A stretch of DNA of 63,987 nt from assembly GCF_001194135.2 (NCBI RefSeq), contig NC_069006.1, positions 16,122,018 to 16,186,004 of the forward strand. The letters run 5' to 3'. A program made the position numbers and the translations under genes. Of this stretch, positions 49,263-50,056 are shown piece by piece. The notes beneath the pieces are model-generated. The model was not told the DNA's origin. It worked only from the letters and a program-made list of their open reading frames with translations, and ran no database searches. How positions within the stretch are numbered: position 1 is the first letter of the stretch; each line of letters opens with the position of its first letter. This DNA is from Octopus bimaculoides (Eukaryota).

Positions 49263-49751
49263 GCATACACAGCTGTTAGTAAACAGCAACATGATGCCTA
49301 CACCTGTTGATCAACAATAACAATACATACACACCAACACAATAAACCAATATAGAATATTACAGATATATTAAAAACCACTTCAAAGGTTTGATTATCT
49401 TGTAAATTAAAACATTCAAGTCATGCTGTCTGGCAAATGTCATCTGCCTCACTGAATATCAAGTTGTTTTCATGTTGTTTAGACTGTTATTTAGCCACAG
49501 AGTTGTGATCAAAGCTATTCAAACTTTCTGGTATATCTAGAACTAGATTATCCCATCTACCAGTCTATTATCGCTATTGCCACCCCAATCCAGCAGACTT
49601 ATGATAAAAAGTGTTCTAGTGTGACCATCCCACCACTTTTGTTTGATTCCAGATAGCATACATAAAACTGGAATATCCAGTTTTTTTTTCCCCCCCAAAG
49701 ATGTTAGGGCATGATATGAGAGAAATTTCATTGCTATTTTGACCAAGTCAA

Positions 49752-49868
49752 AACGACCATATCACATTGAGAGCACCGGTTCTCATCCGATCACCGAAGT
49801 TAAGCAATGTCGAGCCTAGTGAGTACTTAGATGGGTGACCGCTTGGGAAACCTAAGTGCTGTAAGCAT
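49752..49868 (+). pseudogene. 5S rRNA-derived sequence (nearly full length, first ~4 nt missing)
   Basis: acgaccatatcacattgagagcaccggttctcatccgatcaccgaagttaagcaatgtcgagcc..gtacttagatgggtgaccgcttgggaa..gtgctgtaagc; A-box and C-box recognisable; CpG-type substitutions. Confidence 0.9.
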
Positions 49869-49932
49869 CACACACAACGGTGGTGTATCAGCATGGCCGC
49901 AGCTCTGAGCTGAAACTATAGATGAAAAAAAA
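49752..49932 (+). mobile_element. 5S-headed retroposon (SINE3-like) with LINE-type tail
   Basis: 5S + tail cagcatggccgcagctctgagctgaaac + A tract; TSD aagtcaa at 49745-49751 and 49933-49939. Confidence 0.7.
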
Positions 49933-50056
49933 AAGTCAACCAGCTGCATAGAACAGCAATTCCTGATCTTTTCCCAATTGGCAGTCATCTTGGTAAATAA
50001 ATAATCCTCTAGGAGCCCCTTGTTTAAATATGTAAAACAATTTCCCAAAGTTTGAG

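What the first reader, a model, noticed from the sequence alone, without database searches (positions are those of the whole stretch)
49745..49939. 5S rRNA-headed retroposon sharing a 3' tail with the dominant tRNA SINE
Seen: near-complete 5S with internal promoter boxes, then about 55 bp containing cagcatggccgcag..ctgaaac (also in family A tails; closest to the isolated tail at 60897-60956 with hairpin cagctc-at-gagctg), an A tract and a 7-bp TSD. Known: 5S-derived SINEs (SINE3) are much rarer than tRNA-derived ones and use a LINE 3' end. Inference: a SINE3-type family or a one-off 5S/LINE template-switch chimaera using the same partner LINE. I cannot confirm whether it is already described.
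Basis: partly seen in the sequence, partly recalled or inferred. Interest (0 to 1): 0.75.

Follow-up and report, generated by a model that had tools for sequence, protein, structure and literature searches.

The report
Octopus 5S rRNA-headed retroposon copy
This is one old, decayed retrocopy in an octopus genome, made of a full 5S ribosomal RNA sequence fused to a LINE-type 3' tail; it is most likely a member of a 5S-derived SINE family, a known but uncommon kind of mobile element that repeat surveys have already listed for octopus genomes.

Summary
Rfam finds one full-length 5S rRNA match at 49749-49867 (88.8 bits). A 56-bp tail follows directly, then A10, and the whole is flanked by a 7-bp direct repeat (AAGTCAA). 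No Pol III terminator lies between head and tail.

The tail core occurs in at least 13 copies of the dominant tRNA-CORE SINE in the window. The 5S element and one isolated tail (60894-60958, minus strand) carry a distinct variant. Its 5-bp hairpin stem differs at two base pairs, each changed on both sides, so pairing is kept.

The genome is Octopus, bimaculoides or a close relative.

I could not run the decisive test, a genome-wide count of the head-tail junction. About 67 kb of extra O. bimaculoides sequence held no second copy.

Published repeat annotations list SINE/5S families in O. bimaculoides and O. vulgaris (four families, 9.8 Mb), and about 24,000 5S-derived loci in giant squid.

Best reading: a copy of a SINE3-type family (0.6). 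Main rival: a one-off template-switch chimaera (0.3). Interest is modest, as a new member of a known kind.

The parts
49745..49751 (+). 5' copy of the target-site duplication AAGTCAA
   Evidence: Exact 7/7 match with 49933-49939. Random-segment control: 406 of 20000 reach 7 nt. Sequence read.
49749..49868 (+). 5S rRNA-derived head. Full length by the Rfam model; the first 3-4 nt overlap the direct repeat.
   Evidence: Rfam RF00001, 88.8 bits, model positions 1-120, E 1.1e-17. It is the only 5S match in the window. Helix I is mispaired. The head has 6 CpG against 17 TpG+CpA, consistent with an old, decayed copy.
49796..49810 (+). Box A-like part of the 5S internal Pol III promoter (GAAGTTAAGCAATGT)
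   Evidence: Coordinates. The assignment is by position in the Rfam alignment and by the classical Xenopus 5S internal control region, which I recalled from established knowledge.
49812..49817 (+). Intermediate element-like segment (GAGCCT)
   Evidence: Coordinates. The assignment rests on established knowledge of the 5S promoter; it was not tested functionally.
49826..49843 (+). Box C-like segment (CTTAGATGGGTGACCGCT)
   Evidence: Coordinates. These positions are conserved in the Rfam alignment.
49869..49924 (+). LINE-type 3' tail, variant B. It is homologous to the tail of the dominant tRNA-CORE SINE from about 49876 onward.
   Evidence: Core motif: 8 matches against 0.03 expected. Tails of all copies are listed. 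It is 79.7% identical over 69 nt to the isolated tail.
49900..49912 (+). Tail hairpin CAGCT-CTG-AGCTG (5-bp stem, 3-nt loop)
   Evidence: 5 of 5 pairs form. The dominant SINE has CAGTC-AAAT-GACTG at the same place, so two pairs are changed on both sides (alignment A1).
49925..49934 (+). A10 tract at the 3' end
49933..49939 (+). 3' copy of the target-site duplication AAGTCAA
49969..49972 (+). First TTTT downstream, a possible Pol III stop for a transcript of this copy
   Evidence: There is no TTTT inside 49749-49934; the first one lies at 49969. Its use as a terminator is inferred.
60894..60958 (-). Isolated variant-B tail with no 5S head (ACACAATGGTGCCCCAGCATGGCCACAGCTCATGAGCTGAAACTAGATAAAATG-A9-TG)
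   Evidence: Its hairpin CAGCT-CATG-AGCTG pairs 5 of 5. Its 5' end falls within about 3-5 nt of the point where the tail begins in the 5S element.

Best explanation
The element is an old, inactive copy of a 5S rRNA-derived SINE (SINE3-type) in an Octopus genome.

Proposed mechanism:
- A founder arose when a LINE reverse transcriptase copied about 60 nt of a LINE-type 3' end and then switched template to 5S rRNA.
- The product kept the internal 5S Pol III promoter (box A, intermediate element, box C) but lacked the 5S terminator. Pol III could therefore transcribe head plus tail.
- The tail carries a 5-bp stem-loop and an A-rich end, the 3' signature that the partner LINE's reverse transcriptase recognises. 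The transcript was therefore copied back into the genome by target-primed reverse transcription. That left the A-rich end and a 7-bp target-site duplication.

Shown here:
- The head, the tail, the A tract and the direct repeat.
- The absence of a terminator between head and tail.
- The homology of the tail to SINE tails, and a stem kept by compensatory change.

Inferred:
- Pol III transcription and recognition by a LINE enzyme.
- Membership of a multi-copy family. This rests on published repeat annotations, not on a count of this junction.
For: - Rfam gives a full-length 5S match at 88.8 bits.
- There is no TTTT between the 5S end and the A tract, so a Pol III transcript started in the head would run through the tail.
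- One pair of 7-bp direct repeats encloses head, tail and A10. This points to a single integration event.
- The tail core is shared with 13 tails of the dominant tRNA-CORE SINE in the window and 12 more in three O. bimaculoides loci.
- The hairpin sits at the same position in all tails. Its stem is CAGTC/GACTG in the dominant type and CAGCT/AGCTG in the 5S element and the isolated tail. Two pairs are changed on both sides and still pair 5 of 5. This is what is expected of a structure under selection in the source LINE or SINE.
- Published annotations support a family. O. vulgaris lists SINE subdivision '5S' with 4 consensus families and 9,831,953 bp, and one recently active family (PMC13282606). 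That is 0.35% of the genome, or about 225 bp per 64 kb, roughly one copy per window as seen here.
- O. bimaculoides lists SINE/5S at 0.030% and SINE/5S-Core-RTE at 0.021% of repeats, and O. vulgaris SINE/5S at 0.039% (PMC8967140 Table S2).
- The giant squid paper reports about 24,000 loci derived from 5S rRNA, 'many likely SINEs' (PMC6962438).
- A second variant-B tail in the window starts within a few nt of the head-tail junction. This fits a short 60-65-nt tail module, or 5' truncation of a 5S-SINE RNA at the base of the structured 5S domain.
Against: - The junction is single-copy in everything I could search: the window and 66.9 kb of non-N O. bimaculoides DNA from three other loci.
- No partner LINE carrying this tail was found.
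- The published 'SINE/5S' labels come from automated or semi-curated classifiers and could partly reflect 5S rDNA arrays or pseudogenes. In O. vulgaris the 'recently active' 5S class has 7 insertions covering 42 kb, which looks more like arrays than SINEs.
- I could not compare this element with those consensus sequences.
- A template-switch chimaera predicts exactly the same architecture: complete small RNA, then the 3' part of a LINE or SINE, then an A-rich end, then a direct repeat.
- The two published estimates of abundance differ by more than tenfold.
Confidence: 0.6

Rival explanations
1. It is a one-off chimaeric retropseudogene. During a single retrotransposition event, a LINE reverse transcriptase started on the 3' end of a LINE or SINE RNA carrying the variant-B tail. 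It copied about 56 nt, switched template to a cellular 5S rRNA molecule and copied that to its 5' end. The product integrated once and never became a source gene.
For: - The architecture is exactly that of known small-RNA/LINE chimaeras: the complete 5S runs to its 3' end, followed directly by a 3' fragment, an A-rich end and one pair of direct repeats.
- The junction is unique in the window and in 67 kb of further octopus DNA.
- Template switching to small RNAs is the accepted origin of such chimaeras and of SINE heads (PMC4824008, PMC4758252).
Against: - Sporadic chimaeras are rare per genome, so meeting one in a 64-kb window is unlikely. That argument holds only if the window was not chosen for it.
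- 5S-classified SINE families with 10^3 or more copies are reported for Octopus.
- The isolated variant-B tail begins within 3-5 nt of the junction. That is an unlikely coincidence for two independent events on a long LINE RNA.
Confidence: 0.3
2. It results from two independent events: a 5S retropseudogene, and later a severely 5'-truncated LINE or SINE tail that happened to insert at its 3' end.
For: Short isolated tails of this type do exist (60894-60958).
Against: The direct repeat AAGTCAA flanks the combined unit: one copy lies 5' of the 5S part and the other 3' of the tail's A tract. No second pair of repeats and no A tract lies between head and tail. The insertion would also have had to hit the last base of the 5S sequence.
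Confidence: 0.04
3. It is a functional or recently dead 5S rRNA gene unit, and the 'tail' is ordinary rDNA spacer.
For: The full-length Rfam match, with promoter-like boxes present.
Against: - There is only a single copy, with no tandem array.
- Helix I is mispaired at 8 positions.
- No T-run terminator follows the 5S end.
- The downstream sequence is homologous to SINE tails found throughout the genome.
- An A tract and a direct repeat are present.
Confidence: 0.02
4. It is an assembly artefact that joins a 5S read to a SINE tail.
For: The window comes from a gapped assembly (13 N runs, 7.4% N). The nearest gap is at 48735-49210.
Against: The element lies in about 4.6 kb of uninterrupted sequence (49211-53856). 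The direct repeat at both ends would not arise from a misjoin.
Confidence: 0.02

Closest known systems
SINE3 of zebrafish (Kapitonov and Jurka 2003) and other 5S-derived SINEs: fruit-bat MEG-RS/RL, springhare Ped-1, lepidopteran HaSE3 and relatives, and AfuSINE3 in Aspergillus
   Same: They share the 5S rRNA-derived head with its internal Pol III promoter, the loss of the 5S terminator, a 3' part borrowed from or mimicking a LINE 3' end, an A-rich end, and target-site duplications. SINE3-type families are stated to have arisen independently several times (PMC10886601).
   Different: The host is a cephalopod mollusc. A 2024 review lists 5S SINEs only for reptiles, insects, fish and mammals (PMC10946416). 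The element here is minimal: head plus about 56 nt of tail, with no Deu or CORE domain and no tRNA remnant. Its tail is a variant of the tail used by the host's dominant tRNA-CORE SINE. The copy number of this exact structure is unknown.
Octopus tRNA-derived CORE-SINEs (OR1/OR2 of Ohshima and Okada 1994; 'SINE/tRNA-Core' in repeat annotations)
   Same: They share the 3' module: GGTG..CAGCATGGCCRCAG, then a 5-bp hairpin, then GAAAC and an A-rich end. They live in the same genome, which implies the same or a related LINE machinery.
   Different: The head is 5S rather than tRNA-like, and there is no CORE domain and no internal microsatellite. The stem sequence differs at two pairs (CAGCT/AGCTG against CAGTC/GACTG). 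The terminus is A10 rather than AAGTAAAAGA-type repeats. I assign the window's SINE to the CORE type from sequence resemblance and from the literature, not from a comparison with the published consensus sequences.
Chimaeric retrogenes made by LINE template switching (U6/5S/other small RNA joined to L1, Alu or mRNA 3' parts; Buzdin et al. 2003)
   Same: The same layout: a full-length small RNA at the 5' side, a 3' fragment of a retroelement, an A-rich end, and one pair of direct repeats.
   Different: Those chimaeras are single events with individual junction points, made by L1 in mammals. Here the tail carries a structured recognition hairpin typical of 'stringent' LINE-SINE pairs. Families classed as SINE/5S are also reported for the genus.
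Eel UnaL2/UnaSINE1 and CR1/L2-type LINE 3' ends (Kajikawa and Okada 2002), where a stem-loop plus short terminal repeats is recognised by the reverse transcriptase
   Same: A short conserved stem-loop lies close to the 3' end and is followed by A-rich short repeats. The stem is maintained by compensatory change between variants.
   Different: No LINE with this 3' end was identified here, and its clade (CR1, L2, RTE or other) is unknown. Recognition is inferred, not tested.

Membership tests
SINE (SINEBase definition, PMC3531059) | Short (<1 kb), interspersed, non-tandem repeat | tested here: met
   The element is 183-190 bp. It is a single non-tandem copy with unique flanks.
SINE (SINEBase definition) | At least 60% identity with tRNA, 5S rRNA or 7SL RNA over at least 60 nt | tested here: met
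   Rfam 5S_rRNA match over the whole 120-position model at 88.8 bits.
SINE (SINEBase definition) | [quoted passage not shown] | not testable with these tools
   I found one copy in the window and none in 66.9 kb of other O. bimaculoides DNA. The literature lists SINE/5S families in Octopus, but their sequences could not be compared.
SINE (SINEBase definition) | Distinct from an RNA pseudogene: carries extra body or tail sequence, or diagnostic changes shared with a source gene | tested here: inconclusive
   An extra 56-bp LINE-type tail is present. A one-off chimaera would show the same thing, and diagnostic substitutions cannot be judged from one copy.
SINE3 / 5S-derived SINE | 5S-derived head that keeps the internal promoter (box A, IE, box C) | tested here: met
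   The box-like segments are at 49796-49810, 49812-49817 and 49826-49843, within a full-length 5S match. This copy carries transition changes in each box relative to the usual animal sequence, a comparison I made from memory.
SINE3 / 5S-derived SINE | No Pol III terminator between head and tail, so that the tail is transcribed | tested here: met
   There is no TTTT in 49749-49934; the first lies at 49969.
SINE3 / 5S-derived SINE | 3' end shared with a partner LINE | tested here: inconclusive
   The tail is shared with the dominant SINE and with an isolated tail. No LINE with this end was found in the window or in loci L019-L021. The one LINE 3' fragment in the window (14957-15272) ends in (CAT)n and is unrelated.
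SINE3 / 5S-derived SINE | Hallmarks of retroposition: A-rich or repeat terminus and target-site duplication | tested here: met
   A10 plus the 7-bp AAGTCAA repeat.
SINE3 / 5S-derived SINE | Transcription by RNA polymerase III from genomic copies | not tested
5S rDNA gene unit | Tandem array, intact helix I, and a T-run terminator directly after the gene | tested here: not met
   There is a single copy, helix I is mispaired at 8 positions, and no T-run follows.
Template-switch chimaeric retropseudogene | Unique junction: each chimaera is an independent event | not testable with these tools
   The junction is unique in about 126 kb of sampled sequence, which is far too little to decide.

The most novel reading that the evidence does not exclude
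This would be the first characterised 5S rRNA-headed SINE family of a mollusc. It would be a minimal element: a 5S head plus a tail module of about 60 nt. The module would have been taken from, and co-evolved with, the same LINE-tail lineage that drives the huge octopus tRNA-CORE SINE expansion. The compensatory stem variant would then mark a second, separately recognised LINE partner. Octopus would become a natural system in which one tail lineage has captured two different Pol III heads.
Probability: 0.4. Interest if true: 0.45.

Novelty: new member of a known kind. Interest (0 to 1): 0.3.

Why it matters
If it is a family, it adds cephalopods to the short list of lineages in which 5S rRNA, rather than tRNA, became the head of a SINE. 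It would also show head exchange on a shared LINE-type tail within one genome, which bears on how new SINE families are born by template switching.

The two tail variants, with a stem kept by paired changes, give a ready-made test of which features the octopus LINE reverse transcriptase reads.

In practical terms it matters for annotation. 5S-like hits in cephalopod genomes (thousands to tens of thousands are reported) should not be counted as rRNA genes.

It does not change any general picture. 5S SINEs are known, they arise repeatedly, and octopus repeat surveys already carry a SINE/5S class.

Tried and rejected
No depth, junction-count or expression test was therefore possible.

2. Public DNA scans. 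I scanned metagenome, genome and viral contigs for 5S box C followed 30-60 nt later by the tail core, and found 0 hits. A control pattern for the very abundant SINE tail gave only 18 chance bacterial matches that do not extend beyond the pattern. Those collections hold no octopus DNA, so the negative result says nothing.

3. Protein-database detour for other copies.
- A six-frame translation of the element gave 1038 word candidates, none at E<=1.
- The ORF next to the element is not on record.
- The C-terminus of a LINE fragment in the window had no candidates.
- Peptides translated from the dominant SINE did hit 14 O. bimaculoides proteins. Three of them gave genomic loci, and a fourth look-up failed. 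These 80.6 kb hold 12 dominant-type tails but no 5S and no variant-B tail.

4. Paralogous empty site. The flanks are unique in all the sequence I held.

5. Literature search for the tail or junction as printed sequence found nothing relevant. The Walker and Doolittle 1983 paper on 5S rRNA sequences of marine invertebrates (which might have given an octopus 5S sequence) and the 2015 octopus genome paper are not held. I could therefore not measure divergence from the true octopus 5S gene. My estimate of roughly 12% divergence, mostly transitions and many at CpG, rests on a typical molluscan 5S sequence recalled from memory and is only a lead.

6. Rfam at E<=1 gave about 100 microRNA-family hits. 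All lie on TA/TG microsatellites and I rejected them as artefacts.

Full report
WHAT IS THERE

The region 49745-49939 reads as four parts in a row. First comes a 5S rRNA sequence, then 56 bp of non-5S sequence, then A10, and the heptamer AAGTCAA stands at both ends.

Rfam's 5S_rRNA model matches 49749-49867 on the + strand over all 120 model positions, at 88.8 bits against a gathering score of 38 (E 1.1e-17). It is the only 5S match in the window, even at E<=1. All other matches at that threshold are microRNA models landing on TA/TG microsatellites.

Segments corresponding to the classical internal promoter are present: box A-like at 49796-49810, intermediate element at 49812-49817 and box C-like at 49826-49843. 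Helix I no longer pairs. The head has 6 CpG against 17 TpG+CpA, as expected for an old, decayed copy.

No TTTT occurs anywhere between the start of the 5S part and the A tract; the first one lies at 49969. The Pol III terminator that follows a real 5S gene is therefore missing.

The 7-bp direct repeat matches 7 of 7. In a control with random segment pairs of the same size from the window, 2% reach that length (406 of 20000). The repeat is only modest evidence on its own. It is convincing in context, because it brackets exactly head, tail and A tract.

THE TAIL

The 17-nt core pattern CAGCATGGCCGCAGCTC, with up to 3 mismatches, has 8 matches in the window where 0.03 are expected. A looser scan finds 13 tails belonging to the dominant SINE, plus two variant tails. 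The dominant SINE has a tRNA-like head, a CORE-like domain, an internal TA/TG microsatellite and this tail.

The dominant tails read ..AAGGCGGTGC(C/T)CCAGCATGGCCGCAGTCAAATGACTGAAACAAGTAAAAGA.. . The 5S element reads ..CAACGGTGGTGTATCAGCATGGCCGCAGCTCTGAGCTGAAACTATAGATG-A10.

An isolated tail on the minus strand at 60894-60958 reads ACACAATGGTGCCCCAGCATGGCCACAGCTCATGAGCTGAAACTAGATAAAATG-A9-TG. It is the closest relative of the 5S element's tail, at 79.7% identity over 69 nt.

All tails carry a 5-bp hairpin at the same position. Its stem is CAGTC/GACTG in the dominant type and CAGCT/AGCTG in the two variant copies. The fourth and fifth pairs are each changed on both sides, and all five pairs still form. 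The loop varies freely among dominant copies (AAAT, TAAT, CAAT, AAAA) while the stem is kept.

This is the pattern expected of a structural signal, such as the 3' stem-loops that 'stringent' LINE reverse transcriptases recognise. It also says that the 5S element does not simply carry the dominant SINE's tail. It carries a sister variant.

WHICH GENOME

Peptides translated from the dominant SINE hit 14 database proteins. Three genomic loci fetched from the O. bimaculoides chromosome assembly GCA_001194135.2 carry 12 tails of the same dominant type. The window is therefore from Octopus, bimaculoides or a close relative.

WHAT IT IS NOT

It is not a 5S rDNA unit. There is no tandem copy and no terminator, helix I is broken, the downstream sequence is a dispersed SINE-type tail, and an A tract and direct repeat are present.

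It is very unlikely to be two separate insertions. A single pair of direct repeats encloses the whole unit, and nothing resembling a second A tract or repeat separates head from tail.

An assembly misjoin would not create matching direct repeats. The element also lies in about 4.6 kb of gap-free sequence.

FAMILY OR ONE-OFF

This is the question that decides how interesting the finding is, and I could not answer it directly.
- Scans of the public metagenome, prokaryote-genome and viral collections for 5S box C followed by the tail core found nothing.
- A control scan for the hugely abundant SINE tail returned only chance bacterial matches. Those collections contain no octopus DNA, so their silence means nothing.
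- A detour through the protein index yielded only 80.6 kb (66.9 kb without N) of further O. bimaculoides sequence. It holds no 5S-like sequence and no variant tail.
- The junction is single-copy in the window, and the flanks are unique.

The evidence on the family question is therefore indirect.

(a) Published annotations. A curated repeat annotation of O. vulgaris lists a SINE subdivision '5S' with four consensus families covering 9,831,953 bp, one family with recent insertions (PMC13282606). That is 0.35% of the genome, or about 225 bp per 64 kb, roughly one element of this size per window, which matches what is seen.

An independent RepeatModeler-based survey gives SINE/5S at 0.030% and SINE/5S-Core-RTE at 0.021% of repeats in O. 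bimaculoides, and 0.039% in O. vulgaris. It also gives SINE/5S-Deu-L2 at 1.18% in the giant squid (PMC8967140 Table S2). Taking these as shares of copy number and using the 3.64 million elements counted for O. bimaculoides in that paper's Table S3, the O. bimaculoides figures amount to the order of a thousand copies each.

The giant squid genome paper reports about 24,000 loci derived from 5S rRNA and suggests that many are SINEs (PMC6962438).

These labels come from classifiers. They may include 5S arrays: the O. vulgaris 'recent' class has 7 insertions over 42 kb. The two abundance estimates also differ more than tenfold.

(b) The isolated tail. The isolated variant tail begins within 3-5 nt of the point where the tail begins in the 5S element. 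Two independent events on a long LINE RNA, a template switch and a 5' truncation, would rarely coincide so closely. A short common source would explain it, for example a 5S-SINE RNA whose reverse transcription often stops at the base of the structured 5S domain.

(c) Rarity of chimaeras. Sporadic small-RNA chimaeras are rare per genome, so meeting one in a 64-kb sample is improbable, provided the window was not chosen for it.

Against all this, a template-switch chimaera predicts exactly the same architecture. I put the family reading at 0.6 and the one-off chimaera at 0.3.

MECHANISM

Under either reading the origin is the same. A LINE reverse transcriptase started on an RNA ending in the variant tail and switched to 5S rRNA after about 56 nt.

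Under the family reading, the product retained the internal 5S promoter and lost the terminator. It could therefore be transcribed by Pol III through the tail. The hairpin and A-rich end of the tail let the LINE enzyme copy it again by target-primed reverse transcription.

The anatomy is shown. Transcription and recognition are inferred from established knowledge of SINE3, of LINE-SINE tail sharing and of the eel UnaL2/UnaSINE1 system.

The present copy is old. Its tail is about 80% identical to its nearest relative, the head shows many transition changes, and helix I is broken. It is probably inert.

COMPARISON WITH WHAT IS KNOWN, AND NOVELTY

5S-derived SINEs (SINE3 and others) are a known and comparatively rare class that has arisen several times (PMC10886601). 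A 2024 review lists them for reptiles, insects, fish and mammals and does not mention molluscs (PMC10946416). I found no paper describing the structure, tail or partner of a cephalopod 5S SINE.

Against the SINEBase criteria, length, interspersion and similarity to 5S are met. The criterion of at least 100 copies could not be tested.

The finding is therefore best filed as a new, not formally described member of a known kind, one that automated annotation has already flagged at class level. Interest is modest (0.3). It would rise somewhat if the junction proves to be shared by many copies and a distinct partner LINE with the compensated stem is found.

TOOLS THAT WERE CLOSED

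Noticed in passing
window 60894-60958 (- strand): An isolated variant-B tail of about 65 bp with no head, preceded by a T-rich run and with no clear target-site duplication. Its 5' end lies within 3-5 nt of the head-tail junction of the 5S element. It could be a 5'-truncated 5S-SINE copy or a severely truncated LINE copy.
   Followed up: partly
window, e.g. 44430-44830, 50795-51290, 42365-42710; tails at 2069, 2778, 3154(-), 13832(-), 15383(-), 22621(-), 29436, 36560, 42666, 44781, 51233, 58502: At least 13 copies of the dominant octopus SINE: a tRNA-like head, a CORE-like segment, an internal TA/TG microsatellite of very variable length, then the hairpin tail. 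There are two subtypes just upstream of the tail (..ACCCTTCAAGGCGGTGCCCC.. and ..GCTCGACTAAAGGCGGTGCTCC..). The hairpin loop varies (AAAT, TAAT, CAAT, AAAA) while the stem is kept.
   Followed up: partly
window 50045-50350 and about 59661-60032: A second SINE-like family. It has the same tRNA-like head as the dominant SINE up to ..CTGCATGGCACC and then a different body (GTCTCACTGGCACTGGCC..). It may be the 'tRNA-Deu' class that surveys report as the second most abundant in octopus.
   Followed up: no
window 14957-15272 (+): A 5'-truncated LINE 3' end. The open reading frame ends in a C2H2-like motif (..CNVCSRVCLSRAGLISHQRSH..). A short 3' UTR follows, ending in (CAT)n, and runs straight into a TA microsatellite and an inverted SINE tail. 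The word-index protein search found no homologue.
   Followed up: partly
proteins P0001-P0014; loci L019-L021: Ten named O. bimaculoides protein models, plus four unnamed database entries, contain stretches 56-98% identical to translations of the dominant SINE. They include a UBC-core protein, a liprin-alpha fragment, FAM98A, Xaa-Pro dipeptidase and actin-related protein 10 isoform X1. This means either exonised SINEs or gene-model errors.
   Followed up: no
window 26600-28050: About 1.4 kb of low-complexity triplet-like repeats that read as long His-, Pro-, Ser- and Asp/Gly-rich ORFs on both strands, interrupted by N gaps. It is probably expanded microsatellite, not coding sequence.
   Followed up: no
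whole window: There are 13 runs of N (4736 bases, 7.4%), most of them next to TA/TG microsatellites or inside SINE copies, and G+C is 34%. About 100 sub-threshold Rfam hits to mir-297, mir-466, mir-3149 and similar families all fall on these microsatellites and are artefacts.
   Followed up: yes
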